In this document: piece by piece, positions 986 to 30,003 of the stretch
How positions within the stretch are numbered: the first letter of the stretch is position 1
Layout of the letters: each line of letters starts with the position of its first letter
Origin: Octopus bimaculoides
Lineage: Eukaryota
NCBI RefSeq assembly: GCF_001194135.2
Contig: NC_068983.1
Coordinates: 36,112,772-36,150,048 of the forward strand
Reading direction: 5' to 3'
Length of the DNA: 37,277 nucleotides
Translations under genes and position numbers: made by a program
Notes under the pieces: model-generated
What the model saw: only the letters and a program-made list of their open reading frames with translations
Told to the model about the DNA's origin: nothing
The model's database searches: none

Positions 986-1227
986 CTTTTAAGATTAGCA
1001 TCCACACTGGCATTAGCTCTGCTCTCATTTGAAGCTTCTTGACAAGTGACTGGTTGCAGGTCTTTGTTCAACAGAGCTTGTGGTGAGCCACAGCTAGAAA
1101 CTGCAGCAGGTTTTGCATCTTTGACAGCTGGGTCGTCTGTTATGCTGGTGTTAGCAAGGAGCTGTTCAATACCGTCATTATCATCAGACTCTGATGTAAA
1201 ATTTGAATCCATTTCTTTCTTATTTAC
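986..1227 (-). CDS. DIS3L2: DIS3L2-like exon, acidic/low-complexity insertion following the WK of CSD1 (VNKKEMDSNFTSESDDNDG...DANLK)
   Basis: Acceptor tttattttgaag|GTAAAT, donor AAAAG|gtaat; 242 nt, phase 0 to 2; open frame joins the 2006-2107 exon; DIS3L2 carries a variable acidic insertion at this position. Confidence 0.85.
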
Positions 1228-1306
1228 CTTCAAAATAAATAAATAAATAGTCTTTAATTCAGTATCACACAACAAATCCTCCTCATCATCATCATCATCA
1301 TCACCA

Positions 1307-1725
1307 CCATCATCATCATTTAACATCCATTTTCCATGCTGATATGGGTTGGACAGTTTGGCAGGAGCTGCACCAGGCTCCAATTGTCTGTTTTGGCACG
1401 GTTTCAATGGTTGGATGCCCTTCCTAACGTCTACCCCTTTACAGAGTGTACTGAATGCATTTTATATAGTACCATCACCAGTGCTTTATATGTGGTACCA
1501 GTATGGGTGTTTTATACGTGGAACCAGCATGGGTGCTGGCAGATACTGGTGTCATGCAAATGGCACCGTGCCGGTGGCATCTAAAAGCACCCATTACACT
1601 CTCGGAGTGGTTGGCATTAGGAAGGGCATTTAGCTGTAGAAAACCATGCCAAATCAGACTGGTGCCTGGCGCAGCCTTCCAGCATGCCAGCATGGATAAC
1701 GGACATTAAATGATGATGATGATGA
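1307..1725. repeat. Two oppositely oriented RTE 3'-end copies forming an inverted repeat
   Basis: (CAT)n-tailed copy at about 1307-1500 and (GAT)n-tailed copy at about 1545-1725. Confidence 0.8.
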
Positions 1726-2005
1726 CTGGCAAAGATGCTTTTTACATGGCACCAGTATAGGTGCTTTTTACGAGGCACCAGAATGAGTACTAAGGATGTT
1801 ACACAATTAGTTACAAATGTCTGAACTTTACAGAAGTATATTGCAGAGAACATTAATCTCTTTGTTACTAACCTACCTAGCGGGATGCCACTTTGTTTTC
1901 TATGATAAAAATTATCAAACTGACTCCATGATGGAATCCCACCCCCACCTCAAACCACTAAAATATAAAAGATAACAAATGATGATGATCATTAAAGAGA
2001 ATTAC

Positions 2006-2107
2006 CTTCCATTTAGTTTTGTCATTGATGAGAACAAGGACGAGGTCTCCATTAAGAGCTGAGTTACGATTCTTTGTGCCACAGATGTAGATATCAGAGT
2101 GTCCATC
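2006..2107 (-). CDS. DIS3L2: DIS3L2-like exon, CSD1 core (DGHSDIYICGTKNRNSALNGDLVLVLINDKTKWK)
   Basis: Acceptor ccaatttctttag|GAT, donor AAG|gtaatt; 102 nt, phase 0-0; matches the DIS3-family motif D..DI.I.G...RNRALNGD.V.V...WK. Confidence 0.93.
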
Positions 2108-3149
2108 CTAAAGAAATTGGTTTAAAGAGAATGAAATAACAATGTTTTAATTTTTCAAGTAATATGCACAGATTGATTGAAGAACATATTTTCAGGCATG
2201 TCTTTAAAATCACTAGGATTTACTTTTGTTATTTACTACTGCACATATCCCTCCTATATGTCCATATTTAACTTAAGAAAACAGAAAAATTATAGCCATC
2301 ATATAGAAGAAAGCCTTCTCACTCTCGATCCAGCAGAATACTGAGCATGTGGCAGCTGGAGGATGAGTGGGATGTATTAGCACTCAGCTGGTACTCATTT
2401 CAACTGTGTAATGTGAAATGAAATAATCTTTGTAGGCTCTCTCAAATAAATGGACTCAATGTCATAGACATTTAGCTTGCATTTTTATACACAGTGTTTG
2501 TAAAGATATCATAATTAGCGACAGACATAAATGAAGCTCTGAGTCTGAGGCAGAAAGATAGGGAAGAGTGATTAGTGATAGACCTAGAAATGATGCACAA
2601 AATGTGTGGCCAGTGGAAGAGAGAGCCGAAGCTTTGAGTGGGTATAGTACACAGTTTGCTAGTTCAGAAGAATAAAAGACATTATGTTTGTAGTGAAGAC
2701 ATAATGCATGATAGTTGAGTCTATACAGATTCATGAAGGCACTGCAGGATATATACTTTACCATTTTGAACAGTGTTAGCACTGTAGAAATGACAAACAT
2801 TCTGTTGGCTGAATGCACCAAGTTCACTTTCTTAAATTGTGGAAAGCTTTTGCAATGGACTGCCATCCTTATCGCTTATCTACTTAATATTATGGAATCT
2901 ATAGAGAAGAACCAACTTTATGGATGTCTGTGACTCAGGTTTAGCTTAAAACGACATTCTACATGCCACAGTCAACTGAGTAAGGAATAGATTCTAAATC
3001 TTCTGAGGACAATACTGGTAACATTGGTTGGGTATTATTTTAAAATTGGTGCTAAACATTGGGGTCTATGAGCCTTTGAGGGATTTTGTAGAGGTTTCTG
3101 TTAATATTTGACAAAAATAAACTAAAATGAAAGAAAGAAATAAACTCAC

Positions 3150-3203
3150 TGGGTGTGGTACATAGCAATCTTTGTAGTCCTTAGGGTTGATTCGAATTTC
3201 ACC
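3150..3203 (-). CDS. DIS3L2: DIS3L2-like exon (GEIRINPKDYKDCYVPHP)
   Basis: Acceptor tttctcctccttcag|GGT, donor CCA|gtgagt; 54 nt, phase 0-0; matches the G.LRINP...EA(F/Y)VP.P motif that starts CSD1. Confidence 0.93.
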
Positions 3204-3509
3204 CTGAAGGAGGAGAAATTGAAAAAAATTAGTGAGAAAAAGGATAAATAAGAAAGGATAAATAAGACAAAGAATAGTTTTCTATACTTTGATGTAATGA
3301 TTAACAAGATAAATGTTTAAAATAAACCTTGAGTAATACAGGTAAGGAGTTGGGTAAAATATGTATGATGATATCAATGAATGAAAACAAAGAGAGAAGA
3401 TATATTACCTTACATAGGGTGTTTAAAGATTTTATAATATTTCAGGAAAAAATTCCCCTTTTCAAATGGAACAAAGAAAATAAAGAGTTCAGAGAGAGGT
3501 GTTGTTATT

Positions 3510-3795
3510 AGCAGGCCCTCCGAGTGTAAATTACTATAATTACTATAACTGGGTTAGTCCACATTACTCTGTAAGGAGCATAGGGCTGGTTTCCTGGCTT
3601 CTCTAGCATATATATTCCTCTCTGGATGGGATGCTGGTTCATAGCAGGATTACTCATTTTTACCAACTGAGAAGACTGGAGCAATATGATATGGACTGTT
3701 TTGCTCAAGGACACAGTGCATTGGTTGGTCCAGGAATTTAAGCCACAGTCTTACAATCACAAGTCCAACACCTTAACAACTAAGCCATGTGCCCC
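3510..3795 (-). mobile_element. Degenerate tRNA-derived SINE
   Basis: Reverse head ggcacatggcttagttgttaaggtgttgg...; tgtccttgagcaaaac segment also seen at about 11150-11400. Confidence 0.55.
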
Positions 3796-4171
3796 CAATT
3801 ACTATAAATTATAAATTATTTTGATTATCATTGTCATTAATGGATTGGAAGAATTGTAAGTATTGGGTAAAATGCCTTGTGGCATTTAGTTATGGTTCTT
3901 TACATTCTGAATTAAAATCCTGTCAGAATCATCAGTTTTTCATGAAATAAATCACTCATCAAGTATTAAAAGGTCTGAAAGCAAACTTAACAAAGAGCAA
4001 AATTTTAGTGAGCTTGAAAGTAGACAGGACCTTGCAGCCATCAGGGAAATAGCCATAGTAGAAGATACTTTCTCAATGTGTCACACAGTGGGACTGAACC
4101 CAAACCCATATAGTTGCAAAACAAACTTCTTAACCGCACAACCACCCCCACCTCATTCCCCACTCTATACA

Positions 4172-4842: not shown

Positions 4843-5076
4843 CAGAAGTGTGGAATAAAATGTATAAAGAATTCAGGACACAATAACAAACCCTCGCAAC
4901 ATGATGGTTAATCTTACATAAGGACCACCGTGTGAGCAACAGCTTTCACAATGTGCAAAGGCTTGGCATTTTCTGAAACCCTTTTAACATCATTGCTGCT
5001 ATAGGAAACACACAATACTAAAACACTGTGCGGAAAATAGAATTATGATAAATAGATTTGAAAGGAAAATTCTTAC

Positions 5077-5127
5077 TATTATTAGGTTGGGATTATTTTT
5101 AACTTGTTCTTCGATGTCTTCGATTTT
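5077..5127 (-). CDS. DIS3L2: DIS3L2-like exon preceding CSD1 (KIEDIEEQVKNNPNLII)
   Basis: Acceptor poly-T + cag|AAA, donor ATA|gtaaga; 51 nt, phase 0-0; aligns loosely with the KEDVSEGLKRGTLIQ segment that precedes GVLRINP in vertebrate DIS3L2. Confidence 0.8.
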
Positions 5128-5523
5128 CTGAAAAAAAAAAAACCAAATGTTTATAAAAAAAAATTTGACGAAATTTCAATAGTCATTCTATAAATAAATA
5201 TATACAGATTCACACATACATATATATAAATATCTACGCATATATATAAATACATACATGCTTTATACACACAGCATTCATATGCATATATACATATATG
5301 TGTTATGTGTATATGTATGGACATGTATATGTGTGTATATGTGTCGCCATGACTGATTGCTAAATCCACAAGTTTTTCATTCTCTCTCTGTTTATTTCCT
5401 CATATTCCATTGAAGAGCATAGGCCCGAAATGTAAAAGACTTTCTCACTTTCCTAGGCATCAAACTAATATACCTGCTTGTTCATACACCTGTCTTCGTC
5501 TTTTGTTTTTCTGTAAATTTCAA

Positions 5524-5555: not shown

Positions 5556-6072
5556 ACAGACAAAATGATAGATGTTATTTCTAATTTAGGTGCAGCCAGC
5601 AATTTTGAAGGAAGGGGTCAGTTGATGCTACTGACCCCAGTACTAACAAATACTGCACTTATATATTTTTTCTTCCTTTTCATGTTTTGCACACCTTTCC
5701 CTCTTTACTTCCTATCTTTCTATCTACATTTCTATTTATCCATCTGCCCTCTCTTTCTCTTTGCTTATCTTTCTATTACCTCCCCCTGTCTACTTTTGTT
5801 TCCCTTCTTCTTCACACATTCCTTTTTTCATATCTGTATTTTTGTCTCTAACTTTCTATCTACTCCTCTCTGCATTTCCTCTATTCCTATTCTATCTTCT
5901 CTCTGTATAACCATTCTCTTTCTCCCACTCTCTACCCACAATTACCCTTTCTTTCTCTCACTTCCCCCATCCTCAAATGATCATCCTGTTTCTAAAACAT
6001 TTTGGTCATTTCATTTTTTTTAGCTCCTGTATAAAATTTTTAATTTACTGTCAGCTCAGGGTTTGCCTATTC

Positions 6073-6468
6073 TTTTACTTGTTTCAGTCATTAGATTATG
6101 GCCATACTAGAGCACCACCTTGGAGAATTTTTGCAGAATGAATCAACCCCACTCCAATGCTTATTTGCAAGTCTGGTACTTATTACATTGATCTCTTTTG
6201 CCAAACCGCTAATTTATGGGGACGTAAACTGACCAACATTGGTTGTCAAGCGATGGCGGGGGGACAAACACAGACACACACACACACATATATATATACA
6301 TACATACGATGGGCTTTTATCAGTTTCCATCTACCAAATCCATTCACAAGGCTTTGGTTGGCCTGAGGCTATAGTAGAAGACACTTGCCCAAGGTGCCAC
6401 ACAGTGGGACTGAACCCGGAACCATGTGGTTGGGAAGCAAGCTTTTTACCACACAGCCACTCCTGCGC
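6073..6468 (-). mobile_element. tRNA-derived SINE, main family
   Basis: Head ggcgcaggagtggctgtgtggtaaaaagcttgcttcccaaccacatggttccgggttcagtccc with Pol III A/B-box-like motifs; internal (TA)/(TG) microsatellite. Confidence 0.85.
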
Positions 6469-6514
6469 CTAAGATGTATATATGGAACGATGATGATGAT
6501 GATGATGATGATGA

Positions 6515-6911: not shown

Positions 6912-7785
6912 TCTTTTACTTGTTTCAGTCATTAGACTGCAGCCATGCTGGGGCAATGCTTTGAAGTATTTTTAGTTGAATGTATTTACCCCAGGACTAA
7001 TTTTTTAAAGCCTAGTACTTATTCTATTACTTTCTTTTGCTGAACCACTAGGTTACGAGGATATAAAGACACCAGCACCAGTTGTCAAGAGTGATCGGGA
7101 GACAAACACAGACACACACACATCATCATCATCGTTTAACGTCCACTTTCCATGCTGGCATGGGTTGGACAGTTTGACTGAGGACTGGCAAGCCAGAGGG
7201 CTGCACCAGGCTCCAATCTGATCTGGCAAGGTTTCTACAGCTGGATGCCCTTCCTAACACCAACCACTTTGAGAGTGTAGTGGACACTTTTTATGTGCCA
7301 CTGGCAGAAGGGTCAGTCAGGCAGTACTGGCATCGACAACGCTTGAATGGTGCTTTTTACATGCCAGCGGCACGGGAGCTAGTCAGGCAGTACTGACATC
7401 AACCAGGCTTGAATGGGGCTTTTTATGTGCCAGCGGCATAAGAGCCAGTCATGCGGCACTGGCAATGATCACGCTTGAATGGTGCTTTTTACGTGCCACG
7501 GGCATGGGAGCCAGTCAGGCAGCACTGGCAACGACCCACGCTCGAATGGTGCTTCTTACGTGCCACCGGCAAAGGGGCCAGTCAGGCGGTACTGGCAACG
7601 ACCACACAATACACACACACACACACACACATATATATACAATGGGCTTTTTTCAATTTCCATCTACCAAATCCACTCACAAGGCTTTGGTTGGCCTGAG
7701 GCTATAGTAGAAGACACTTGCCCAAGGTATCATGCAGTGGGACTAAACCTGGTACCATGTGGTTGGGAAGCAAACTTCTTACCAC
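6912..7785 (-). mobile_element. Main-family SINE interrupted at its (CA)n by an RTE 3'-UTR insertion (about 7121-7600) with several ~66-bp monomers
   Basis: SINE tail 6912-7120 and body/head 7606-7785 flank a (CAT)n-tailed insert containing repeated gaatggtgcttttta..gtgcca units. Confidence 0.8.
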
Positions 7786-8035
7786 ACACACACACACATA
7801 TACATTTACTGTGTGTGTGTGTGTGCGTGTGTGTGTGTGTGTATGACACAAAAACATCATAGCCATGTGAAGGTTTAATAGATAAATGCATAATCATGTA
7901 GTCAGGTGTATATAGTAGTTTAAAACCACCTGATATTTATGTCAGTAGAGCTGATGAAAAGCATTACAAATGTGCTTTGCTGTCAGTAACATACAGAAAT
8001 ACTGAAATAGTAAGGACACAAATATTTTCAATTTG

Positions 8036-8711
8036 CTATGGCAGAGTTTCTACAGCTGGATGCCCTTCCTAACGCCAACCACTCAGAGAGTGTAGTGGGT
8101 GCTTTTACGTGTCACCCGCACAAAAACGGCCACGCTCAAAATGGTGTCTTTTATGTGCCACCCGCACAAGCCAGTCCAGGGGCACTGGCAACGATCTTAC
8201 TTGGCTTGCCGGGTCTTCTCACGCACAGCACATTTCCAAAGGTCTCGGTCAGTAGTCATCGCCTCGGTGAGGCCCAATGTACGAGGTCTTGCCTCACCAC
8301 CTCAGCCCAGGTCTTCCTGGGCCTACCTCTTCCNNNNNNNNNNNNNNNNNNNNNNNNNNNNNNNNNNNNNNNNNNNNNNNNNNNNNNNNNNNNNNNNNNN
8401 NNNNNNNNNNNNNNNNNNNNNNNNNNNNNNNNNNNNNNNNNNNNNNNNNNNNNNNNNNNNNNNNNNNNNNNNNNNNNNNNTACTTACACTCTGACGGGTA
8501 TTCACATTGATATTACACATCCAACGGAGCATACTGGCTTCATTCCTTGCGAGCTTACGTATGTCCTCAGCAGTTACAGCCCATGTTTCACTGCCATGTA
8601 GCATGGCTGTTCGTACGCATGCGTCATACAGTCTGCCTTTTACTCTGAGTGAGAGTCCCTTTGTCGCCAGCAGGGGTAAGAGCTCTCTAAACTTTGCCCA
8701 GGCTATTCTTA
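8036..8711 (-). mobile_element. RTE-clade LINE fragment: C-terminal part of the RT ORF plus 3' UTR
   Basis: Minus-strand translation RIAWAKFRELLPLLATKGLSLRVKGRLYDACVRTAMLHGSETW...RWMC, then after the gap GRGRPRKTWAEVVRQD (frameshift) ...DRDLWK...TAA at 8197-8199; these are typical RTE motifs. Confidence 0.9.
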
Positions 8712-9352: not shown

Positions 9353-9931
9353 AGCCATTTTAGAGCTCAAGGAATACAGATGAGATAAAACCATTTTCAG
9401 CAGAAACAAAAGTAAACAAATAAATAAAATTGAATCCTTCATTAATCTTAAGGATAACAAAGTGAACTTCAGTAATAACACAAAGTGTAGACTAACTCCA
9501 TTAAAAGAGAAACAGTAATTAATAATCATAATCTAGATGGCTTGACAGGAGCTGCCAAAGCCAGGGACTGCACCAGGTCCCGTAGTCTGTTTTGGCTTGG
9601 TTTCTACAGCTGGATGCCTTTCCTATCACCAACCACTTTACAGAGTGTGCAAGGTGCTTTTTGCATGGCATCATCACCAGTGGTTTTTAGATGGACCCAC
9701 CACCAGTGCTTTTTAAGTGGCACATACATTCACCAGTGTCTTTATGTGGCACCATCATCAGTACTTTTTGAATGTTAGGGGATGAAATGCATGGACAGTG
9801 TGTGTGTATGTATATATATATATATATATATGTGTGTACATCATGAAAAATAATTTTGGATACATTTCAGAAAAGTTCAGAAAATAGTCAACAATTCATT
9901 AGAAGAAAGATTTTAGAAGATCCTAACATAC

Positions 9932-10020
9932 ATAAGAGGTGTTGTTTGTCTGGTTATTCGGAGGAGGTTGAGCTTGATTTGACATTTTGTACATTGGTGT
10001 GAAGTTGTGAGGTGCATGAC
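9932..10020 (-). CDS. Probable upstream exon (HAPHNFTPMYKMSNQAQPPPNNQTNNTSY)
   Basis: Acceptor tttctgtctttaattctcacag|, donor TAT|gtatgt; 89 nt, open in the phase 1 to 0 reading and in frame with 5077-5127; no recognisable homology. Confidence 0.65.
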
Positions 10021-11589: not shown

Positions 11590-12337
11590 CATAGGTCTGC
11601 TACATTGGGACTCAACAGTTGCAATTGTTGTACATCATAGAACCACACACATTATAATTGACCTTATATGTCTTATAAGGGAAAATAGAATAAAATAAAA
11701 TAAAATAAAAATCTGTGGAGTACAGATTTTAACTGAGTGCCGCCATTGCAAAAATAACAAAATACTCATATTTGTTGCGTAAAAGAAGCAATGGACAGAT
11801 TCAGTTATATGAACTATCAAGGACTCTGGACTACTTATAATATTGAGTATAGTTCCAGTGTGCTGTAAGTAATATATAAACTTCAGACTGAAGACTGATG
11901 GTATTCTTTTGTAACAAAGCTCCTTTGTGTAGAAGAGAAAAGTTCATGTTTTTAATCATCATCATTTAACATCCGTTTTCCATGCTGGCGTGGGTTGGAT
12001 GGTTTGACAGGAGCTGGTAAGCAGGAGAGCTGCACCAGGCTCTAGTTGTATGTTTTGGCATGGTTTCTCTGACCGGATGCCCTTCCTAATGCCAACCACT
12101 TTATAGAGTCTACTGTGTGCCTTTTACATGGTGTCAGCATGGGTGAATGAGCTTATTGTATACAGTGCTTAAGTGTATTACAATTCAAAATTGCATATCA
12201 CATAGAAACCACTTTTATTTTTGAGGACATTGTGTAATGTTCCATTTGTCATGTCAAATCATTCCTCAAAATTCAAATACATAACTTCTAGCTTTTAACA
12301 TTGTTTTATAGCTTTGTCAAAAGAATGAGGTTGGTAC

Positions 12338-12407: not shown

Positions 12408-13247
12408 CTAAAGACCAAACATTAGTATTAAACTGGGTGATGGATTAAGTCTATCACCAAATCCTACTTAGAAATAAGTAGAAGGAAAATGTATTTAAAA
12501 TGAAATCTTTAATATTAAAGCAATATATAAATGCAGGGTTCATCTGTATCAGAGCATATCCTTGCTAATCTTGTATTATTTTGTCTGATTCTGTCAGGTT
12601 AAGGCAAATTGACAAAATAACGGAGTAGATAGAGGAAAGGAATACTATCAAGTCAAATTATATAATCACTAAAGAAGGTTGACATTAAATTATTCTATGT
12701 AGCCAACTAATATTCATTAGGATAAAAGAAGAAAATACATTATTTCAGGAAATCATTTAATTTTTACCATTTTATATTCATTTTTCCATTTCAGTAAATT
12801 ATTTTTTAAAATTTACTATTTTCCATCCCTGATTGAACAAGGAAATAGCTATTTGTTGATACAATTCCTTTACTGTTCTATGTTCTTCCTATTGTTAATA
12901 ATTCAACTCCCACAGTGAAACCAGTGAGTTTTATTTAATTAACAAGGCAGACTGGGACACATGTAACACAATGGCAGCAGTAAAATCTGGATTTATGACT
13001 AATGTGGTCAAAGGTCAACCATATTAACCAGATGACCATTATGAAGATAAGAAATAACCATTAATGGAAAAATAATCTGGTCCAATGACTAAGTGATTAA
13101 AGAAGCTAGACGACTGACCACAAAGTCATAAGATCAAACGTCTTTGTGTTATGCCTCCTACTCTGAGCAAAGTACTAAACTCAAAAACCTTTCCCTCTAT
13201 GGATACAAAGTATTAAATAGATAAACAGTATAGACTGTAGTATTTAC

Positions 13248-13317
13248 ATAGTTCAAACAACGTAAATTGTTTTATGCCATGAGGAAGAAGAGAAAGCTTT
13301 AACACTAGGGAGCTACA
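13248..13317 (-). CDS. Candidate exon (CSSLVLKLSLLPHGIKQFTLFEL)
   Basis: Acceptor ccttcatttgcag|, donor CTAT|gtaaat; 70 nt, phase 0 to 1; bridges 15718 (phase 0) and 10020 (phase 1). Confidence 0.5.
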
Positions 13318-13463
13318 CTGCAAATGAAGGTTTGTGATTTTGTATCCTAGTGTTACAATCTTTAGTCTTTTTTTTCTTCTCTTTCTGTTTCCAAAGAAGG
13401 ACAAATGTCTGAGACATTAGACATCTTCTTCACACCATAAAACATATTTCATTGTTTGAACTA

Positions 13464-13678
13464 CAGTAACCCCTTGACTATCACGGATGTTACGTTCCAA
13501 AACCCAATAGGTGAAAATCTGCGAAGGAAAAACAATACTGTACTATATATATTTTTAAAATTATTTTTATAGTATATATTTATTTTATTATAAATGGAAA
13601 ACAACACCGTGGAGGAATCGATGTAAGCTTAAATAATAAACCGCGATAAGTGAATCGCAATATGGCAAGGGATTACTG
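13464..13678. mobile_element. pogo/Tigger-type MITE
   Basis: TA|cagtaaccccttgactat ... atatggcaagggattactg|TA. Confidence 0.8.
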
Positions 13679-14639
13679 TATTTGTATTATGGTTTTTAAT
13701 GATGTAGAATATCTCTAGCTTATTAGGATTCTACTGTTTCACTAGTACTTGTATAGATATCTAGAAAATAAGTATTATTCAAGATAATATTAAGCAATTC
13801 AAAGCATTAAAAATATTATTAAGAATTACAGATATTTAACAATAATATAATAATATATATTTCAGTGAAACAAAACCATGTAAGAAGATTCTTTTGGAAA
13901 GTACATCTATCTTCATTTATCACAGGTGTTTGGTTAAAAACAAAAAACACCTTTTTAAAACAAATCAGTTATAAATGAATGATAGAACATATGGGAAAAA
14001 TTGGTTTTGTTCCTTGACCCCAGGTTTTCCTGAGCATTGTGGATGGTCACTGATGCATGCTTTTGTAGTCTAAACAGAATCTTTGATTGTCAACCACGTT
14101 GTTAAGCATAACATGACTCACAAGTGTATTATATTATCCCAGATCAGTAACAAATTAATTAGTGATAAACGAGGATAGATGTACTAGAAAACGGAATCTA
14201 CATAAAGGTTGTACAAAATTAGAGATAGTAATGAAAGGGAAAATATACATTATTTTCAAGAATTATAAAAAGAAACAATATTTAATTTAATTTTTGTTTG
14301 AATTTGCAAAATGTAATTTACCTAAAATTCCATTTGGTGGCTGAGGGTATGTCTGTTTAAACTGTGGTCTGTAGTTTTGTTTGTTGGGTGGCTACAATAA
14401 TAATAAAAAACCATAAACCTCATTGTTAAGTGAAAACGTCTAATACAAATGTATCAAATAACGGTGTTAATGAAGTTGCAACCAAAGGTGAAAGCCTTTC
14501 GCCTGGCAGGTGTCGTGTGTTCAAGTAGCACAGGCCCAGTTGTCATCTAGAGACTGCTTGTATACAAAACCAGAGGCAGAGAAGAAGGTGAGATAAAGAG
14601 GCAAACCAAACAGTAATTGAATGCTGGATCAGGAGTGAA

Positions 14640-15194: not shown

Positions 15195-15627
15195 CCCTTT
15201 AGCATTCAAACTGGAATAATAATAGAAGAGACAGCATGAGGACAACACTTGTTGAGAAGTAAGTGATATTTCACTCGGTCTTTATATTGATTTTACTCGC
15301 CTGGTTGTTACAGTTCTTATTGAGATGAGGATCTATTGGGTTGGCACCACCCCTGTGCACCATTGACAACAATAGTAACACTATCTCATTAGCAGGTTGG
15401 GAAAATAATGGCTTCTCAACTTCTTCAAGAAGCTGCGAATATGAACCTTTTATTCATATTGTTTCGAATTAATCCTGAATTATCTGTGGCTTTGAGATTT
15501 CACTGATGTGATTGCTTATTTTCAGAATAACATTGTAAGATAGGTGTGAGAAGCCAGATCTAGCCAGTTTAAACATAAAACAAGTAGAATATTAAGGCCA
15601 GATATGGCCGGTTTAAATGCTAAAGGG
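15195..15627. mobile_element. TTAA-flanked piggyBac-like MITE carrying captured host sequence
   Basis: TTAA at 15191-15194 and 15628-15631; TIRs ccctttagcattcaaactgg / ccggtttaaatgctaaaggg; the right part matches family members at 720-945 and about 31540-31747. Confidence 0.85.
15210..15452 (-). pseudogene. Captured copy of 15637-15869 (most of exon 15718-15872 plus downstream intron) inside a MITE
   Basis: Direct repeat with about 9 substitutions across the exonic part; donor changed from gtaagt to gcgagt; native acceptor absent. Confidence 0.9.
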
Positions 15628-15717
15628 TTAATAATTACTGGAATAATGATAGAAGAGGACAACAGTTGTTGAGAAGCAAGTGATATTTCACTTGGTCTTT
15701 ATATTGATTTTACTTAC

Positions 15718-15872
15718 CTGGTTGTTACAGTTCTTATTGAGATGAGGATCCATCGGGTTGGAACCACCCCTGTGCGCCATTGACGACAATAGTAACACTA
15801 TCTCGTCAGCAGGTTGGTAAAATAATGGCTTCTCAACTTCTTCAAGAAGCTGTGAATATGAACCTTTTACTT
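15718..15872 (-). CDS. Probable exon (VKGSYSQLLEEVEKPLFYQPADEIVLLLSSMAHRGGSNPMDPHLNKNCNNQ)
   Basis: Acceptor tttgtttgttccgcag|, consensus donor CAG|gtaagt; 155 nt; only the phase 1 to 0 frame is open. Confidence 0.75.
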
Positions 15873-16315: not shown

Positions 16316-16451
16316 TATTTTCCTGCACCAACCAATGTACAATATTGTACATTTCCTTAATAATTCTTTCATCACTATTGCAACAATTATCGCAAAGTCT
16401 ATGGTTCATTAATGAAGTCAGAATAAGACTGAATATGTCTGGAGTTATTTC
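16316..16451 (-). CDS. Candidate exon (EITPDIFSLILTSLMNHRLCDNCCNSDERIIKEMYNIVHWLVQEN)
   Basis: Protein-like open frame; acceptor ...ctgacaaataagag| (an alternative AG lies 2 nt upstream), donor AATA|gtatca; phase 0 to 1 fits 15872. Confidence 0.5.
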
Positions 16452-17503: not shown

Positions 17504-17574
17504 CTCTACTGGTATTACAGTGGAATCATGGTTTATAAAATGTTCATTCATATTACAGTCACTCTTTGCTTCTG
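17504..17574 (-). CDS. Candidate exon (EAKSDCNMNEHFINHDSTVIPVE)
   Basis: NAGNAG acceptor atatttag|cag|, donor GAG|gtgatt; 71 nt, phase 1 to 0. Confidence 0.4.
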
Positions 17575-19107
17575 CTAAATATTACTAAAAAAAATATACA
17601 AATGAATATATATATATATGTAGTTTGCCTATTAAAACTGTGTACAGTGAAACCTGTACAATTTCAAATATACTAAGTTTCAATTAAGCAGAAGTTTGTA
17701 ACTAGATGCAAGGAAAATTCCAGTTATTTATCAATAAGATATCTGTTGAGTTGTTATTAAGTACAACCACCTGTTGTGCTAAAATTACAGACATAATCTC
17801 CATGTTATGGACTCCCATGAAGATCAAAACATACATAGTTATGACAAGATCAAGACTATTCCTTAAACACTGACAGCACTTCAATGAAGGATGCAACAGC
17901 AGTGGTAACAGGTGAATCACAACTGCTCCTACCTATACACTTTCTGTTCCCTCATCAGCTAGGGAACAACAGAAGTGGCACTATTTCATTGTCACAAAGC
18001 AGTGAGCTGGCAGAAATGTTAGCACGCTGGACAAAGTGCTTAGCAGTATTTCGCCCGTCGCTATGTTCTGAGTTGAAATTAGAATAAGTGAAGGGAGAGG
18101 AGAGAAAATAGTAATTCAGTGAAGAAGTAGTGAGAGTAATAGCCCTGACTAAGAGAGAAAGAGTGAGAGAAAGGAAGTGGCAAAGAGTGCATCATGTATA
18201 TTCTGTTTTTCTTTGTCACAACACATGAATGAGAAAGGAAGGGGTGAAAAAAATCAGTGTTTCAACTCTGTGTGAGTGTATGTGTGTGTGTGTATGTGTG
18301 TGCGTGTGTGTGTGTTTGTGTGCAGTGGAAATGGGATGGTGAATATTCAACGCTGAAAAGAAAAATCAAACAGCATTTCAACTCTGAGTTTATGCATGTA
18401 TATGTGTACATGTACAAGGGAAGTATGTGAATGCTTGTATCTGTGATTATTATGTACCTTATTTTGTACCTTATTTATATATAAAATACTACAATTAGCC
18501 GTCATTTTTGATGGCATGGTGCCAACTAGTATATTATAATTTATATTTAATTGAATCAGAGATGGTACATTTTTACTGACTCTAACTTCAAGACTCTTGA
18601 CTCCACAGATTTGCACACAATATACCATATATATCATCATCATCATCATTTAACATCCGCTTTCCATGCTAGCATAGGTAGGATGATTTGACTGAGGACT
18701 GGTGAACCAGATGGCTACACCAGGCTCCAATCTGATTTGGCAGAGTTTCTACAGCTGGATGCCCTTCCTAACGCCAACCACTCCGAGAGTGTAGTGGGTG
18801 CTTTTATGTGCCACCGGCACGAAGGCCAGTCTGGAGGTACTAGCAATACACACACACATATGAATATATAAAAATACAATGCCCATTATTATATTATAAT
18901 GTGTTAAAATTTCCAATTTCACAGATATTAATTTGATTATTTCCTTGCATTGAAAGAAATCAAATAGCTTAAGACATTCAAACTGAATAGAAGCACCATT
19001 GACGTAACAACATTTTTTTCTTATTGCTGGTTATGAATGACTGAATTTCAGTGTATATATTTATAAATGTATGCGCACGCACACACACACTCTCTCTGTC
19101 TCACAAT

Positions 19108-19145: not shown

Positions 19146-21529
19146 ATATATATATATATATATANNNNNNNNNNNNNNNNNNNNNNNNNNNNNNNNNNNN
19201 NNNNNNNNNNNNNNNNNNNNNNNNNNNNNNNNNNNNNTATATAGGGTTGAACAGACAGAACACAACAAAGAGAAAAAGTTAGACGAAAGCAGAGCAAATG
19301 GGAAACTAAATGAAAACTTAACAGATGGAAAATATAGACAAACACACGATACACAAAATATTTACAGCTGAGTTTTCCTCATCAGTCAATGACCTAAAAT
19401 ATCACAGTGGTTTTGTGCCATTACCATTGAGACCATTCAATCTTGGAGGTGCCAGAGCTGTTATTAAGCTACTGGGAAAAAGCTAACGAATTTATACTAA
19501 GACTGAAACAAACAAGACATTGTATAAATACAACATATGAAGAATTATGCATATATAATGGCACGAAGCCTTACGGCTATATACATCAGAAGAAAGAAAT
19601 AACACTTACACATACATACACACATAACCTCCTCATTGTCATTTTACATTCATTTTCCAAGCTGGCATGGGTTTGACAGGTCATGATGTTACAAGCATTT
19701 CTTATTGGGACCACTGTTCTCATAAAACTGGTGCTTGTATGCATCATTTATATGAACAGATGTATGCACATGTACACATGTTGTACATGTGCATACATCC
19801 ATTCATATAAGTGTGTATAAATATTCATACACACATATATACATTATATGAATATAATCTTCATTACTGTTTCCATTATCATCAGCACTATTTACATCAT
19901 CTTTCCTGTGATGTTCAATGCTCTCATGTTTGTCCCAGCCTGGTCGGCTTTAGGCTATATCTACAATAAATATCTGCCAATTCTCACCATCTCACAGTCT
20001 CTCTTCACCCAGCTTGTATCATCCATTTCCTTCAAATGTTAAAAACCAATAATGCAGTTGTCTCCCTTCTGAGTCAACAAGATCTTTATGAAATCATTCA
20101 ACCTGCTAGAAATAGCAACCAAATCTCAATATCCTTTTGTCTTAAATAAAAGGAAGAACTATTATCATCATTTAATGTCCATTTTTCATGCTGGCATGGG
20201 GGGAGGGGCGCTTGACAGGAACTGGCAAGGCCAGGGGTTGCACCAGGTTCCATAGTCTGTTTTTGCTTGGGTTTTACAGTTGGATACCCTTCCTAATGCC
20301 AACCACTTTATAAGATGTACAGGGTGCTTCTTATATGGCACTATCACCAGTGCTTTTTACGTGACACCATCACCAGTGTTTTTCATGTGGCAACAGCACT
20401 GGCACAAACGCTTTCTATGTGGCCAACACCAATGCTTAATGTAGTACTAGATATACAAAAAGATGGGACAGCTAAATTAGAACTGACCTAGGGCTATACA
20501 ACAAGTGACATACTCTGAAAATGCTGAACTTTGGAAAGATAAACTGGACACTTGCATAAAAATAAATGTTGTATGGCAAAATGACCAACAAATGATTCAA
20601 ACTGGGCTCAAATTTTCAAATTCTATAAGAATTTGGCTTTAATCCTTGAGCAAAATATGCTGTTACATATACTAAGAGTGAACATCTTGATTAAACTAAA
20701 CAACTGTTCAACCCATGCCAGCATGGGAAACAGACATTAAATGATGATGCCAACAATCTGACAACTGAAAGGGCTTATAGGTTCCATAGATAAGGCTATA
20801 TTTCATCATTAAATAATTACTCTATCTCTGTATTAACTAGTTCAAATCCTGCCACAGTCAACTTTGCCTTTCATCCCTCCTGGGTTAATAAAATTAATAA
20901 GTAGCAGTCATTTACTGGGGAGGGCAAGGGAATCAATTCCCCACTCCCCTGAAAATTGCTAGCCTTGTGCCTAACTCAGAATCAAAAGTTGGTGAGCAAA
21001 CAGTGTATGTTCCAGATCTTTACATTCTAAGTTCAATTCCTGCCAAGGTCAATACTGCCTTTTATCTCACCAGGATTAACAAAATCAAGCACCAGGTTTG
21101 GACTGAGGCCAATGGCATTGACTAACAAACTCCTTTCTAAACTACTGGCGTCTTTCTGCCTAAATAACAATTATTATTATTATATGTTTGACTTTTTCTT
21201 TGTATTTGTACAAGTTGGCTCCAAGTTTCACCCAGAAACTTTAAGAGACAATAAGTTAGAAGTTCAAGTTGGTGTTATGCCTAGGGTGTCATATATTTGG
21301 TTTTGCACATAGTATTGTTCTAGAGAATGTTTAAGAAAACATAAGAAAATTATAAGTTTGTTTTAACATTTGAGATTACATAGCCAGTATTTTATGTAGG
21401 TTATTATTGTTATTATAGATGTTGCACAGTATACAATAACTTGAGGTTATTGATTGAAGATGTTGTCTACTGGGGGTTGGTACTGTCTGTCAAGTCACAA
21501 CAAAGGCCTCAGATTATTATTATTATGTC

Positions 21530-23411: not shown

Positions 23412-23651
23412 CATCTTGTCTTAATGTAATATTTTGGTTTACATTATCTGTGTCCTTGTTTTCAGATGATAGAATGTGATTTGAAGAAAATTTGATTGTT
23501 ATTTTTAGCAGGTCAAATGAGCATGTTGAGGCTACTTCACTGGCTTGAACTGAGAGAATATGTAAAAGGTCTTTCACTGGCTTGTTATTTGTAATTATTT
23601 GAAAAGAAGCTGAATGTTCTGTCTCATTGGTATCACACACCTCCCCATAAT
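23412..23651 (-). CDS. Probable exon (YGEVCDTNETEHSASFQIITNNKPVKDLL...NITLRQD)
   Basis: Lies within the 23353-23664 ORF; acceptor cttatttttggtttctgaag|, weak donor GATG|gttaca; 240 nt, phase 1-1. Confidence 0.55.
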
Positions 23652-24270: not shown

Positions 24271-24803
24271 GGTGGTGATGGAAATGAGTAAGTGCTAGGT
24301 TAACCCTTTCGATACCATATTTCTGTTGAAATACACTGCTTTTGTTTTAATTAATTTTGAAAATAATGAAGAATTTAGTAAGTGGTTGAAAAAAAAGAAA
24401 GAACATCAGAGATGCTTTGCCCCACACAGAAACTACAGAAGCTACTCAGAGGTTTTGCAAGCTCTTATAAATCTGTTGCAATGCTGGAAACGCTTCTGTA
24501 TCATCAGCTGGTACCTCAGGGTCACAAGCATTTCACCCCTTAGCTTGTATGCTTCACCTGAGTTGGGCAGCAAGGAGTGAGCTGGTCTTCACCTACAGAA
24601 CGATTTCACTCGCAGTCTCTTACTGTCATTAACCCATTAACTCCCAGAGTACTTAAATTTCTGAATATTACTTTTAAATGTTTACAAATTATTGAAAATA
24701 GGTTAAAATGAAAAAAATAATTATTAAAACCCCTTTAGTTCAAGTAGAAATGGAAATTCTTGGTGTCCTATAAATAGGATACTGAGACAATGTGATATAG
24801 CTT

Positions 24804-25159
24804 AGGATTTTCGAGCGAGACCGTTGCTGGTTCCCCTGGACTGGCTCATGTGCAGGCGACACATGAAATCTTTCGAGTGAGATCGTTGCCAGTGCCCCTG
24901 GACTGGCTCTTGTACGGGTGACACAAGAAATTTTTCGAGCGAGATTGTTGCCAGTACCACTGGACTGGCTCTTGTGCGGGGCCGTTGTAGGATTTTCGAG
25001 CGAGATCGTTGCTGGTTCCCCTGGACTGGCTCATGTGCGGGCGACACATGAAATCTTTCGAGTGAGATCGTTGCCAGTGCCCTTGGACTGGCTCTTGTGC
25101 GGGTGACACAAGAAATTTTTCGAGCGAGATTGTTGCCAGTACCACTGGACTGGCTCTTG
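24804..25159 (+). repeat. Higher-order tandem repeat: 185-bp period made of three 61-62 bp monomers (ABC-ABC), running into an N-gap
   Basis: Monomer A (aggattttcgagcgaga.cgttgctggttcccctgg) recurs at 24804 and 24989; the B and C variants recur with the same spacing. Confidence 0.9.
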
Positions 25160-25532
25160 NNNNNNNNNNNNNNNNNNNNNNNNNNNNNNNNNNNNNNNNN
25201 NNNNNNNNNNNNNNNNNNNNNNNNNNNNNNNNNNNNNNNNNNNNNNNNNNNNNNNNNNNNNNNNNNNNNNNNNNNNNNNNNNNNNNNNNNNNNNNNNNNN
25301 NNNNNNNNNNNNNNNNNNNNNNNNNNNNNNNNNNNNNNNNNNNNNNNNNNNNNNNNNNNNNNNNNNNNNNNNNGTAAAAGCACCCACTACACTCTCTGAG
25401 TGGTTGGCGTTAGGAAGGGCATCCAGCTGTAGAAACTCTGCCAAATCAGATTGGAGCCTGGTGTAGCCATCTGGTTTCACCAGTCCTCAGTCAAATCGTC
25501 CAACCCATGCTAGCATGGAAAGCGGACGTTAA

Positions 25533-27310: not shown

Positions 27311-27582
27311 ACACAAGAGTATTGTTATAGTAGATACCTTGGTCTGCTCAGTGGGAAAAGGCTAAGGCACAAGAGAAACCAAATCTAGCATCCTGGAGTT
27401 CAGTGTCCAACTACTTACTTAAGAATATTATTTTTTTACTTCAGAGAGCTAAAAGCTAAGCTTACTAAGACAGGTTTAGTACAGTAGTAAGTTACTAAAG
27501 AGACCATTGTCTATAAAGACTGGTGATGTACTACACAGTCAGACTATCTCTTAATTTGACATACTGATATTTGTAGGTGTAT

Positions 27583-28030: not shown

Positions 28031-28100
28031 TTAAATTTAATGAAGAATTATAGTTACAACTTTGTATGCCCTACAGGATCAGGAAAAGGATCTTTGGCTA

Positions 28101-28228
28101 TGAATTTCTGAAACTCTCCTGATAAGTTCTTCAAATGATTTATCGGAGAAAAGAGATCGAGGATTCTTTTGGTTACTTTTGGAAATGGTTGTTTGATTGC
28201 ATCTTGTGCAAGATTTCTTTGATATTTT
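28101..28228 (-). pseudogene. Degenerate partial duplicate of the 5' part of the 29280-30003 exon
   Basis: Aligns with 29837-29989 (gaatttctgaaactctcctgataagttcttc...atcggagaaaagag...ggattcttttggttacttttggaaa...gcatcttgtgca); carries a 22-nt deletion and a 3-nt deletion, so the frame is shifted. Confidence 0.85.
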
Positions 28229-28384
28229 GGGAGAATTTTAAAGGGATGATTTTACTTGTATGCTAGAAAATGACCCTTAGAAATTCACTCAACAGTCCAA
28301 CCTGAATAACACAATTTGGTTTTGGATTGAAAAAGACATTTAAATAAATTCTTAACTATTTTATTGTTTATCTTGCATCTTTTG

Positions 28385-28695
28385 CTCACTTCAGTTATTG
28401 GACTGCAGCCATGCTAGAGCATCGCCTTGAAGGGCTTAGCTGAATACATTGACCCTGGTACTTATATTTTTTAAGTCTGATACTTATTTTGGTGGTGGTG
28501 GTTGCAGTGGGTGGGTGGGTGACAAACACGAACATACACAATGGGCTACATCACAGTTTCCATCTACCATACTCAATCACAAGGCATTGGTCTGCTAGGG
28601 GCTATAATAGAAAACATTTGCCCAAGGTGTTGCACAGTGGGACTGAACCCAAAACCATGTGGTTGCAAAGTGAGCTTCTTAATCACACAGCCACG
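28385..28695 (-). mobile_element. Main-family SINE, degenerate
   Basis: Similarity to 6073-6468. Confidence 0.7.
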
Positions 28696-28812
28696 AGACA
28701 ATAAAAGACATGCAGGCTATTCCAACAACAACAAAACAAAACACCACCACCATTGCTGCTATCACCATTTTGATGGAGATATTTTATATTGAATACACCT
28801 GTATTTTCTCTT

Positions 28813-28830
28813 AATAATAATAATAATAAC

Positions 28831-28862
<32 letters not shown>
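28813..28862. repeat. (AAT)n microsatellite
   Basis: Directly visible. Confidence 0.95.
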
Positions 28863-28863
<1 letters not shown>

Positions 28864-29279
28864 CGTCATTCAACACAAAACATCCCTACAAGAATATGGA
28901 TCTTTGAAAATAACTTAATGGTCGATGAAACCATTCCAAACAAAGTTAAAAAAATGATTCAACAGAAGCTTTATTTTTTTTGCTATCTTCTTAAGAAAAT
29001 CCAACTGTCAATGCATATAAACAGTAAAACTAGATATATCTCTAAGCAACCTTTGGACTTGCTACATCTGTTCTGTTGAGTGTTCTATATTCACATAACT
29101 AGGTTTTTGTGAGAAAGTTAAAGTATGTAAACGAAAAAGGATAAACACAAGCATTTCCAAAACGTGAAACAGAATGAGAAAGAATTTGTTATGAAAAGAA
29201 CCAATAAATGAATGAATAATGCTATAATATCAGCAGAAAAATGGTCTTTCAGTGAGCAAGAACTGAAAGACACACATAC

Positions 29280-30003
29280 CTTTAGTCTTAGCCACAATAC
29301 ATTTATCGGATGATTTTTGCCCATTGTCCAATTCACTGGACTTTTTCTTTTTCAGTTTTTTCCCTGTACACAGAGTAGAAGAAACTTGTTTAAGGTCTAA
29401 ATTTGAGAGCTGTTTTACAGATTGTCCTTCAACTATATACATTTTATCATCATTGATTTCCAAATCTGTTGCTACACTTTCACCAATTCCTGAGCATTTT
29501 ATTATTGCTGTGTCAAGTAATTCTGTTTCTATACTCAATGTTTTTTTCCTGGATTTTTTAACCCGTCGTCTCCTACGTTTTTGTTTCAAAGAAGTCTGAC
29601 TACCTTCCTCGGAGTGTTCACATTCACAGCTTTCATTATCAGAGTCACTGCTACCTTTCAGTTCACAAAAGTCATCTTTCTCCCTAGAAATATTTTTCAA
29701 TTTGTTTCTTTCTTCAAATTCTTTTGGAATTGTTTTCTCTGCATCAGAGTTTTTCTGAGAATTTATACTTTTATGAGATCTAGATTTTTTGTTTTTTCTC
29801 TTAGTTTTAATTGCTGATAAATTTTCTCTGACTAATTGAATTTCTGAAACTCTCCTGATAAGTTCTTCTTCAAATGATTTATCGGAGAAAAGAGGTTGAG
29901 GATTCTTTTGGTTACTTTTGGAAACGGTTGCTAGAACAGGCAGCTCACCTTGTTCAATTGCATCTTGTGCAGGATTTCTTTCAATTTTACAAGACTCCAT
30001 CAT
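29280..30003 (-). CDS. Large K/S/E-rich coding exon with basic NLS-like tracts (KQKRRRRRVKKSRKK, KKLKKKK); probably the first or near-first coding exon
   Basis: Longest ORF in the window (257 aa); strong donor AAAG|gtatgt at 29279 (phase 1); ATG ATG at 30003 with an in-frame TAA just upstream. Linkage to the DIS3L2-like exons is inferred from phases only. Confidence 0.75.

What the first reader, a model, noticed from the sequence alone, without database searches (positions are those of the whole stretch)
986..30003. DIS3L2-like exoribonuclease with a predicted ~500-aa novel N-terminal region
Seen in sequence: exons 29280-30003, 23412-23651, 17504-17574, 16316-16451, 15718-15872, 13248-13317, 9932-10020 and 5077-5127 have GT-AG ends with matching phases and total 1536 nt (512 codons) ahead of GEIRINP. 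Established: DIS3 and DIS3L have an N-terminal PIN domain, whereas vertebrate DIS3L2 has only about 70 residues before CSD1 and is cytoplasmic. Here no PIN motif is evident; instead there is a basic/acidic disordered region with NLS-like tracts followed by a possibly helical Cys-containing segment (IFSLILTSLMNHRLCDNCC...MYNIVHWLVQ...LLEEVEKPLF). Inference: a lineage-specific extension or gene fusion that could redirect a uridylation-dependent nuclease to the nucleus or to new partners.
Basis: partly seen in the sequence, partly recalled or inferred. Interest (0 to 1): 0.7.

Follow-up and report, generated by a model that had tools for sequence, protein, structure and literature searches.

The report
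DIS3L2 gene start, unproven long extension
The window holds the first exons of an ordinary DIS3L2 RNA-degrading enzyme gene and, upstream on the same strand, real coding exons for a mostly disordered orphan protein, but nothing here shows the two are joined into one protein.

Summary
They have GT..AG ends and matching phases, and they give 1536 nt of open frame ahead of GEIRINP. All assembly gaps lie in proposed introns, at least 1.4 kb from any exon. DIS3L2 homology is real but starts only at exon 5077-5127, which aligns from about human residue 54 (E 2e-15).

Exon 1 (29280-30003) is a genuine coding ORF (P about 6e-13). Exon 15718-15872 has the best splice pair on the strand.

The two exons that hold the frame together are 16316-16451 and 13248-13317. 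They are no better than chance in splice signals, composition or codon periodicity. Every simulated sequence offers an equally good linking exon.

The strong sites instead lead from 15718 to an unlisted exon at 13518, which stops at 13417. Exon 9932-10020 carries in-frame ATGs that give a normal short DIS3L2 N-terminus.

Best reading (0.45): a separate upstream orphan gene next to a conventional DIS3L2. A true fusion through other exons remains possible (about 0.33). No outside sequence could be found, so transcript data are needed.

The parts
29280..30003 (-). Exon 1: ATG-initiated coding exon of 241 codons. It encodes a basic/acidic, S-rich, mostly disordered peptide.
   Evidence: 0 stops in frame against 16 and 37 in the other frames; P(open) about 6e-13. 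Donor AAG|GTATGT at the 99.4th percentile. Top amino-acid composition score. AF2 mean pLDDT 50.6 with one confident helix at 42-73. No homologue in 1.84 billion representative proteins.
28090..28230 (-). Degenerate partial copy of exon 1 (about codons 10-60), with indels and stops, inside intron 1.
   Evidence: Self-BLAST 29837-29930 against 28101-28191, 93.6% identity; alignment and translations.
23412..23651 (-). Probable coding exon with an uncertain 3' boundary.
   Evidence: 112-codon open frame with 8 and 10 stops in the other frames. G1 periodicity at the 100th percentile. Acceptor 93rd percentile, but donor only 55th and no better donor nearby. Ranks 48 of 448 frame-compatible candidates.
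17504..17574 (-). Possible short coding exon.
   Evidence: Donor 98.5th percentile, acceptor 73rd. G1 periodicity 98th percentile. Ranks 11 of 229.
16316..16451 (-).
   Evidence: Acceptor 25th and donor 30th percentile. Composition 57th percentile. G1 periodicity 52nd percentile. Ranks 31 of 35 alternatives.
15718..15872 (-). Best-supported internal exon; open in one frame only, and that frame is in phase with the exon 1 donor.
   Evidence: Acceptor 10.4 and donor CAG|GTAAGT 12.8, the best pair on the strand; 1 of 60 simulations reach it. Composition 94.5th percentile. A direct exon 1 join stays in frame.
15238..15455 (-). Tandem duplicate of exon 15718-15872 plus about 90 nt of its 3' intron, with the donor changed from GT to GC; a likely pseudo-exon.
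   Evidence: 93% identity over 219 nt; alignment.
13417..13518 (-). It could be the terminal coding exon of a separate upstream gene.
   Evidence: Acceptor score 11.9, which ties the best on the strand. Open in phase 0, the phase left by exon 15718-15872 (model A). G1 periodicity 96.7th percentile. AATAAA/ATTAAA at 12935-12939 downstream.
13248..13317 (-).
   Evidence: Acceptor 87th and donor 73rd percentile. Composition 46th percentile. G1 periodicity 31st percentile. Ranks 23 of 174. Every simulation yields an equal or better linker.
9932..10020 (-). Exon with a strong acceptor and in-frame ATGs at 9994-9992 and 9985-9983 (AAAATGT); the most defensible DIS3L2 start.
   Evidence: Acceptor 99.6th and donor 85th percentile. 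Sequence. MSNQAQPPPNNQTNNTSY joins KIEDIEEQ, leaving 35 residues before GEIRINP.
5077..5127 (-). First exon with detectable DIS3L2 homology (KIEDIEEQVKNNPNLII, aligning with human residues about 54-70).
   Evidence: phmmer against PDB: human DIS3L2 residues 51-146, E 2e-15. Acceptor 99.9th percentile.
3150..3203 (-). DIS3L2 exon GEIRINPKDYKDCYVPHP (start of CSD1).
   Evidence: splice sites at the 100th and 98th percentile.
2006..2107 (-). DIS3L2 exon DGHSDIYICGTKNRNSALNGDLVLVLINDKTKWK (CSD1).
   Evidence: Pfam Rrp44_CSD1 E 5.8e-6.
986..1227 (-). DIS3L2 exon encoding the acidic, low-complexity insert after the first CSD1 strands. The gene continues beyond the window.
   Evidence: top composition and G1 periodicity.
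8334..8480 (.). Assembly gap inside a proposed intron, within a LINE-like RT remnant.
   Evidence: RT-like peptide on both sides in the same orientation. 1452 nt from the nearest exon.
19165..19237 (.). Assembly gap inside a proposed intron, within a (TG)n/(TA)n microsatellite.
   Evidence: 1591 nt from the nearest exon.
25160..25373 (.). Assembly gap inside proposed intron 1, between a 62-nt tandem array and the SINE part that follows comparable units in other copies.
   Evidence: (families D8, D10, D12); 1509 nt from the nearest exon.

Best explanation
Two things lie in tandem on the minus strand.

(1) The 5' part of a conventional DIS3L2 orthologue, a PIN-less RNase II-family 3'-5' exoribonuclease. 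Recognisable homology begins at exon 5077-5127. Translation most likely starts at an ATG in exon 9932-10020 (9985 or 9994), leaving 35-38 residues before GEIRINP. At least one non-coding 5' exon should lie upstream, because exon 9932-10020 has a strong acceptor.

(2) Upstream, a separate orphan gene encoding a mostly disordered, basic/acidic, NLS-like protein. It starts at the ATG at 30003 and includes exon 15718-15872, probably also 23412-23651 and 17504-17574. It ends in an exon entered at 13518, with a stop at 13417-13419, giving roughly 330-410 aa.

Shown: DIS3L2 homology and where it starts; the coding nature of exon 1; the strength of the splice sites; the phase relations.
Inferred: which sites are actually joined, and therefore that these are two genes rather than one.
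For: - DIS3L2 identity and the start of homology.
- Exon 1 is a real ORF.
- The strongest splice sites form the chain donor 29280 -> acceptor 15872 / donor 15718 -> acceptor 13518. This chain stays in one frame and reaches a stop after 33 coding-like codons (models A and A2). Poly(A) signals follow at 12935-12939.
- Joining exon 15718-15872 directly to exon 9932-10020 misses the DIS3L2 frame and stops in exon 5077-5127 (model B).
- Exon 9932-10020 has in-frame ATGs, one with A at -3. The resulting N-terminus is as short as in vertebrate DIS3L2, where homology starts at about residue 51-54.
Against: - No transcript, orthologue or annotation could be consulted, so all joins are inferred from generic splice matrices written from memory.
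- No promoter-like or CpG-rich stretch and no convincing non-coding first exon was found between 13.4 and 10.0 kb. CpG o/e there is 0-0.24.
- A gene ending only about 3.4 kb upstream of the next gene's first coding exon, on the same strand, seems tight for a repeat-rich region with multi-kb introns (my own expectation, not tested).
- The donor of exon 15718-15872 could equally skip to a downstream acceptor.
- A weak donor at 13434 (score 1.8) or an alternative donor at 15768 (score 4.6) would restore the DIS3L2 frame (models C and E).
- If exon 17504-17574 is real, at least one more exon is needed that I could not identify.
Confidence: 0.45

Rival explanations
1. The reader is right in substance. 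Exon 1 and the following coding exons are the N-terminal part of at least one DIS3L2 isoform: a lineage-specific, largely disordered extension of roughly 370-520 aa, from a fused or captured upstream gene. Some intermediate exons would differ from those listed.
For: - Same strand and close spacing, with intron sizes like those of the DIS3L2 part.
- Exon 9932-10020 has a 99.6th-percentile acceptor, so some upstream exon belongs to the DIS3L2 transcript.
- Exon 15718-15872 has the best donor in the window, so it is not a last exon.
- No clear promoter signal lies between the two parts.
- Long, poorly conserved, disordered N-terminal regions with regulatory motifs are known in fungal Dis3L2/Ssd1 homologues (PMC8097288).
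Against: - Every in-frame path needs at least one weak site or a chance-level exon.
- In-frame linkers of that quality occur in all simulated sequences.
- The stronger donor at 13436 (score 5.5), 2 nt from 13434, gives a frameshift and a stop inside exon 9932-10020 (model D).
- No homology links the extension to any DIS3L2.
Confidence: 0.33
2. Exactly the reader's eight-exon, 512-codon model is the real mRNA.
For: The frame is open and all ends are GT..AG. Five of the eight exons have at least one strong signal.
Against: - Exon 16316-16451 is at chance level on all three measures (splice sites, composition, periodicity) and ranks 31 of 35.
- Exon 13248-13317 ranks 23 of 174 and has non-coding-like periodicity.
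- The donor of 23412-23651 is at the 55th percentile.
Confidence: 0.06
3. The upstream ORF is not part of any functional gene here. It would be a remnant of a duplicated or transposed coding fragment or a young pseudogene, and the remaining upstream 'exons' would be non-coding 5' exons of DIS3L2 or chance open frames.
For: - Part of exon 1 has a degenerate copy 1.7 kb away, and exon 15718-15872 is tandemly duplicated. This coding-like sequence therefore does get copied locally.
- No homologue was found anywhere that could be searched.
Against: - A 241-codon ORF with an ATG, coding-type codon-position composition and a top-percentile donor at its end is intact.
- A 5'UTR carrying a 241-codon upstream ORF would be a poor DIS3L2 mRNA.
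- The protein libraries searched also failed to find any DIS3L2 for the CSD1 part, so they look blind to this animal group. Their silence says little.
Confidence: 0.12

Closest known systems
Vertebrate DIS3L2 (human and mouse; PDB 8E27/8E29, 4PMW)
   Same: Exons 5077-5127, 3150-3203, 2006-2107 and 986-1227 align with human residues 51-146 (E 2e-15) and mouse residues 18-95. This covers the stretch before and into CSD1, followed by an acidic, low-complexity insert. No PIN domain is detectable upstream.
   Different: Only the first 150 or so residues of the conserved part lie in the window, so CSD2, RNB and S1 cannot be seen.
Fungal Dis3L2/Ssd1/Sts5 homologues with a long disordered N-terminal regulatory region (PMC8097288)
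   Same: These are a precedent in the same family branch for a poorly conserved, disordered region ahead of CSD1 that carries short regulatory motifs. The exon 1 peptide is likewise mostly low confidence in AF2 and rich in K/R, D/E and S.
   Different: There is no sequence similarity. Only two Hxxxx[ST] strings occur, neither with a basic residue in the central positions. Whether the region is attached to DIS3L2 at all is unproven here.
DIS3 and DIS3L1 (exosome-bound, N-terminal PIN domain)
   Same: Same RNase II family, with weak CSD1 similarity (E 1e-3 for DIS3, 0.35 for DIS3L1).
   Different: No PIN match in any upstream peptide. The CSD1 region is far closer to DIS3L2.

Membership tests
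DIS3L2 (Dis3L2 branch of the RNase II/RNB family) | N-terminal cold-shock domain (CSD1) most similar to DIS3L2 rather than DIS3 or DIS3L1 | tested here: met
   PDB phmmer: DIS3L2 E 2e-15 and 4e-14; Ssd1 1e-7; DIS3 about 1e-3; DIS3L1 0.35. Pfam Rrp44_CSD1 26.5 bits against a cut-off of 22.
DIS3L2 (Dis3L2 branch of the RNase II/RNB family) | No PIN domain ahead of CSD1 | tested here: inconclusive
   No Pfam hit at E<=1 and no PDB hit in the 495 modelled upstream residues. The upstream exon set itself is uncertain, and a domain split over short exons could be missed.
DIS3L2 (Dis3L2 branch of the RNase II/RNB family) | CSD2, RNB catalytic domain with the DxxxxxDxDD magnesium-binding motif, and C-terminal S1 domain | not testable with these tools
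   The gene runs off the low-coordinate end of the window after exon 986-1227. No flanking sequence or annotated protein could be retrieved.
DIS3L2 (Dis3L2 branch of the RNase II/RNB family) | Exosome-independent, cytoplasmic, uridylation-stimulated 3'-5' decay | not testable with these tools
   Biochemical and cell-biological properties; known for the yeast and mammalian enzymes (PMC8097288).
Ssd1/Sts5-type Dis3L2 homologues with a regulated disordered N-terminus | Long disordered region on the same polypeptide, N-terminal to CSD1 | tested here: inconclusive
   The disordered character of exon 1 is supported. Physical linkage to the DIS3L2 frame depends on chance-level exons.
Ssd1/Sts5-type Dis3L2 homologues with a regulated disordered N-terminus | Multiple Hxxxx[ST] NDR/LATS (Cbk1) sites with a central basic residue, plus a docking motif | tested here: not met
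   Only HKSINS and HSEEGS occur, neither with K/R in the central two positions.

The most novel reading that the evidence does not exclude
At least one isoform would then carry a lineage-specific N-terminal region of roughly 370-520 aa that is mostly disordered and rich in NLS-like tracts. Such a region could send a normally cytoplasmic, uridylation-dependent nuclease to the nucleus or nucleolus, or to new partners.
Probability: 0.3. Interest if true: 0.45.

Novelty: new member of a known kind. Interest (0 to 1): 0.2.

Why it matters
If the join were real, it would be an unusually long add-on to an enzyme whose cytoplasmic location and lack of exosome contact define its pathway, and it would suggest a testable relocalisation. 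As it stands, the secure content is an ordinary DIS3L2 orthologue plus an uncharacterised upstream ORF. The practical value is as a warning for gene models. In AT-rich DNA with long introns, an open GT..AG exon chain with matching phases can always be built, so it is not evidence of a fusion.

Tried and rejected
- **Protein homology.** Two homologous-protein searches, on the whole 644-aa model and on the 403-aa part without low complexity, returned nothing. They did not even find the CSD1 part, which hits human DIS3L2 in PDB. I therefore treat that database as blind to this lineage and give its silence no weight.
- **Exhaustive HMMER search of exon 1** against 1.84 billion representatives: 0 hits.
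- **The look-up of encoding contigs** for the 257-aa read-through ORF: not on record.
- **Two metagenome scans,** with exon 1 and with the DIS3L2 part: nothing.
- **Pfam and PDB** on the upstream peptides and on alternative joins: nothing.
- **Rfam** on the window: nothing.
- **Literature:** no paper on cephalopod DIS3L2.
- **CpG o/e as a promoter marker:** the whole window is depleted, at about 0.2. The only non-repeat rises are at 13.25-14.0 kb and 5.0-5.5 kb and rest on 6-9 CpGs, too few to use.
- **Better exon between 17503 and 15873:** none found to replace 16316-16451.
- **Better donor for 23412-23651:** none found.
- **Alternative first coding exon 5636-5683** (MKRKKKYISAVFVSTG, donor score 7.0): considered, then set aside. 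It sits in A/GA-rich low-complexity sequence and has a rare C at donor position +3.
- **Six-frame Pfam scan of the minus strand:** the tool rejects translations with stops. I dropped the idea because short exons would give little sensitivity.

Full report
**What was claimed and what is there.** The finding proposes a minus-strand gene. Eight upstream exons, 1536 nt in total, would precede the DIS3L2-like peptide GEIRINP and give a novel N-terminal region of about 500 aa. I re-derived this from the sequence.
- Every listed segment has AG before it and GT after it. Exon 1 begins at an ATG at 30003.
- The lengths add to 1536 nt and the concatenate translates without a stop into exactly the quoted peptides.
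- With the donor of the next exon placed after CCA (exon 3150-3203), the frame continues through 2006-2107 and 986-1227, where the gene leaves the window.

**Gaps first, as the scan's program asked.** The window has N runs at 8334-8480, 19165-19237, 25160-25373 and 30828-30837.
- The first three lie inside proposed introns, 1452, 1591 and 1509 nt from the nearest exon edge. No reading frame crosses a gap.
- The flanks are repeats that match across each gap:
  - LINE-type RT-like peptides in the same orientation on both sides of 8334-8480. At the nominal length of 147 nt the two frames are offset by one base, so the length estimate is not exact or the remnant is frameshifted. The LINE identification rests on my memory of LINE motifs; Pfam gave nothing.
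  - (TG)n/(TA)n on both sides of 19165-19237.
  - A 62-nt tandem array before 25160-25373 and, after it, the SINE segment that follows comparable 60-66-nt units in three other copies in the window (families D8, D10 and D12).
- This favours continuity and makes a hidden exon unlikely. It does not prove that the scaffold is correctly joined between 30 kb and 5 kb.

**The DIS3L2 part.** A phmmer search of the peptide from exon 9932-10020 onward against PDB gave these matches:

| Protein | E-value | Residues aligned |
|---|---|---|
| Human DIS3L2 | 2e-15 | 51-146 |
| Mouse DIS3L2 | 4e-14 | 18-95 |
| Ssd1 | 1e-7 | |
| DIS3 | about 1e-3 | |
| DIS3L1 | 0.35 | |

- Pfam finds Rrp44_CSD1 above its cut-off.
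- Homology begins at exon 5077-5127, where KIEDIEEQVKNNPNLII aligns with SKEDVSEGLKRGTLIQ. Nothing upstream of that exon resembles any DIS3L2.
- Only the beginning of CSD1 and the following acidic insert lie in the window. The catalytic RNB domain cannot be checked.

**The upstream part: which pieces exceed chance.** I scored all GT and AG sites on the minus strand with generic metazoan donor and acceptor matrices, written from memory (a limitation), and expressed each site as a percentile. I also scored two other properties, using the four secure DIS3L2 exons as positive controls: amino-acid composition against the window's own non-exon open frames, and the excess of G at codon position 1. 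The controls score 82-100% on composition and 91-100% on periodicity.

| Exon | Acceptor pct | Donor pct | Composition pct | G1 periodicity pct | Reading |
|---|---|---|---|---|---|
| 29280-30003 (exon 1) | starts at ATG | 99.4 | top | 97 | genuine coding |
| 23412-23651 | 93 | 55 | 85 | 100 | probable exon, 3' end unclear |
| 17504-17574 | 73 | 98.5 | 85 | 98 | possible exon |
| 16316-16451 | 25 | 30 | 57 | 52 | chance level |
| 15718-15872 | 99.5 | 100 | 94.5 | 86 | well supported |
| 13248-13317 | 87 | 73 | 46 | 31 | chance level |

- Exon 1 has no stop in frame against 16 and 37 in the other two frames, which gives P of about 6e-13 for staying open. Its codon-position composition is of coding type.
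- Exon 15718-15872 has the best acceptor+donor pair on the strand between 5.1 and 29.3 kb, a value reached in 1 of 60 simulated sequences. It is open in only one frame.
- For exon 23412-23651 there is no better donor nearby.

**Why matching phases prove nothing here.**
- Between 15717 and 10021 there are 174 AG..GT segments that are open in the right phase and of the right length class to link exon 15718-15872 to exon 9932-10020.
Every simulation has at least one. The opposite strand gives 141.
- The other weak exons rank 48 of 448, 11 of 229 and 31 of 35 among frame-compatible alternatives.

**What the strong signals say.**
- Exon 1 leaves phase 1 and exon 15718-15872 needs phase 1, so they join in frame directly or through 23412-23651.
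- Exon 15718-15872 leaves phase 0. Joined directly to exon 9932-10020, it reads a frame that stops in exon 5077-5127, not the DIS3L2 frame (model B).
- The next strong acceptor downstream of 15718 is at 13518 (score 11.9, which ties the best on the strand).
- In phase 0 it opens 33 codons, IFTYWVLERNIRDSQGVTVVQTMKYVLWCEEDV, with coding-type periodicity (97th percentile). They end in TAA at 13417-13419, and AATAAA/ATTAAA follow at 12935-12939.
- That chain gives a self-contained ORF of 326 aa, or 406 aa with 23412-23651 (models A and A2).
- Exon 9932-10020 has a 99.6th-percentile acceptor and in-frame ATGs at 9994 and 9985, the latter in AAAATGT context. MSNQAQPPPNNQTNNTSY then joins KIEDIEEQ, leaving 35 residues before GEIRINP. 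That is comparable to, and shorter than, the 70 or so in human.

**What keeps the fusion alive.**
- The strong acceptor at 10020 means some upstream exon belongs to the DIS3L2 transcript. I found neither a convincing non-coding first exon nor a promoter-like stretch between 13.4 and 10.0 kb.
- The window is CpG-depleted almost throughout (o/e about 0.2). The small rises at 13.25-14.0 kb and 5.0-5.5 kb rest on 6-9 CpGs.
- In-frame routes exist. One runs through 13434-13518, using a weak donor (score 1.8) 2 nt from a stronger out-of-frame donor (score 5.5). Another uses an alternative donor at 15768 (score 4.6).
- A separate gene ending 3.4 kb upstream of the next gene's first coding exon seems tight for this kind of genome. 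That is my expectation and was not tested.

**Nature of the upstream peptide.**
- Exon 1 is 21% K+R, 17% D+E and 13% S, with KRRRRR and KKKK runs.
- A single-sequence AlphaFold model has mean pLDDT 50.6 and 157 of 240 residues below 50. Its only confident element is a helix at residues 42-73.
- The upstream peptide has no Pfam or PDB match, and exon 1 has no match among 1.84 billion representative proteins.
- The word-indexed protein database also failed to find any DIS3L2 for the CSD1 segment. The absence of hits therefore reflects what the libraries cover and is not evidence of novelty.
- Metagenome scans and an exact-product look-up were also empty.

**Comparison with what is known.**
- DIS3 and DIS3L1 carry an N-terminal PIN domain. 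The RNase II family is defined by two CSDs, the RNB domain and S1. Dis3L2 degrades uridylated RNAs in fission yeast and mammals (PMC8097288).
- In the fungal Dis3L2/Ssd1 branch the region ahead of CSD1 is poorly aligned and disordered and carries conserved kinase motifs. A long disordered N-terminus in this family would therefore not be unprecedented.
- The motif pattern of that fungal region is not present here.

**Verdict.**
- The DIS3L2 assignment is sound.
- There is real coding sequence upstream on the same strand. The claim that it forms one protein with DIS3L2 rests on two exons that look like noise.

| Reading | Probability |
|---|---|
| Separate upstream orphan gene next to a conventional DIS3L2 | about 0.45 |
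| True extension through partly different exons | about 0.33 |
| Non-functional remnant | about 0.12 |

Transcript evidence would settle it in one experiment.

Noticed in passing
window 15238-15455 versus 15655-15873 (minus strand): Exon 15718-15872 together with about 90 nt of its downstream intron is tandemly duplicated 417 nt away at 93% identity. The copy keeps the open frame, but its donor is GC instead of GT and its acceptor region is damaged. It could be a pseudo-exon or a decayed mutually exclusive exon.
   Followed up: partly
window about 28090-28230 versus 29837-29975 (minus strand): A degenerate copy of about codons 10-60 of exon 1, with indels and stops, lies 1.7 kb downstream in the proposed first intron.
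   Followed up: partly
window 13417-13518 (minus strand): An exon-like segment not in the finding. It has a top-scoring acceptor, 33 coding-like codons in the phase left by exon 15718-15872, and ends in TAA.
   Followed up: yes
window about 8230-8700 (minus strand), around gap 8334-8480: LINE-like reverse-transcriptase C-terminal remnant (..LHGSETWAVTAEDIRKLARNEASMLRWM..[gap]..GRGRPRKTWAEVVRQDL..). I identified it from memory of LINE motifs; Pfam gave no hit.
   Followed up: partly
window 524-690, 6161-6481, 7494-7814, 28554-28694, 36158-36478; also 1309-1523, 7121-7291, 9540-9722, 11955-12139, 18635-18805, 20161-20392, 33417-33587: Several SINE-like interspersed repeat families in both orientations. 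About 30% of the window matches another part of itself.
   Followed up: no
window 24741-25159 and 33736-34065: Tandem arrays of 62-nt and 66-nt related units, each followed by the same SINE-like segment. The first array runs into gap 25160-25373.
   Followed up: partly
whole window: Strong CpG depletion almost everywhere (o/e about 0.0-0.3), including upstream of exon 1. The highest non-repeat values are at 13251-14000 (0.72-0.79) and 5001-5500 (0.77). This fits heavy historical methylation, and no clear CpG-rich promoter is visible.
   Followed up: partly
window 5636-5683 (minus strand): An ATG-initiated open segment, MKRKKKYISAVFVSTG, with a phase-0 donor (score 7.0) could also splice to exon 5077-5127. 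It sits in A/GA-rich low-complexity sequence and has C at donor position +3, so it is probably chance.
   Followed up: partly
window 30400-30470 (minus strand): About 400 nt upstream of the exon 1 ATG there is a slightly less CpG-depleted stretch containing caccgccattgtc (reverse complement AATGGCGG, YY1-like from memory). It is a possible promoter for the upstream ORF.
   Followed up: no
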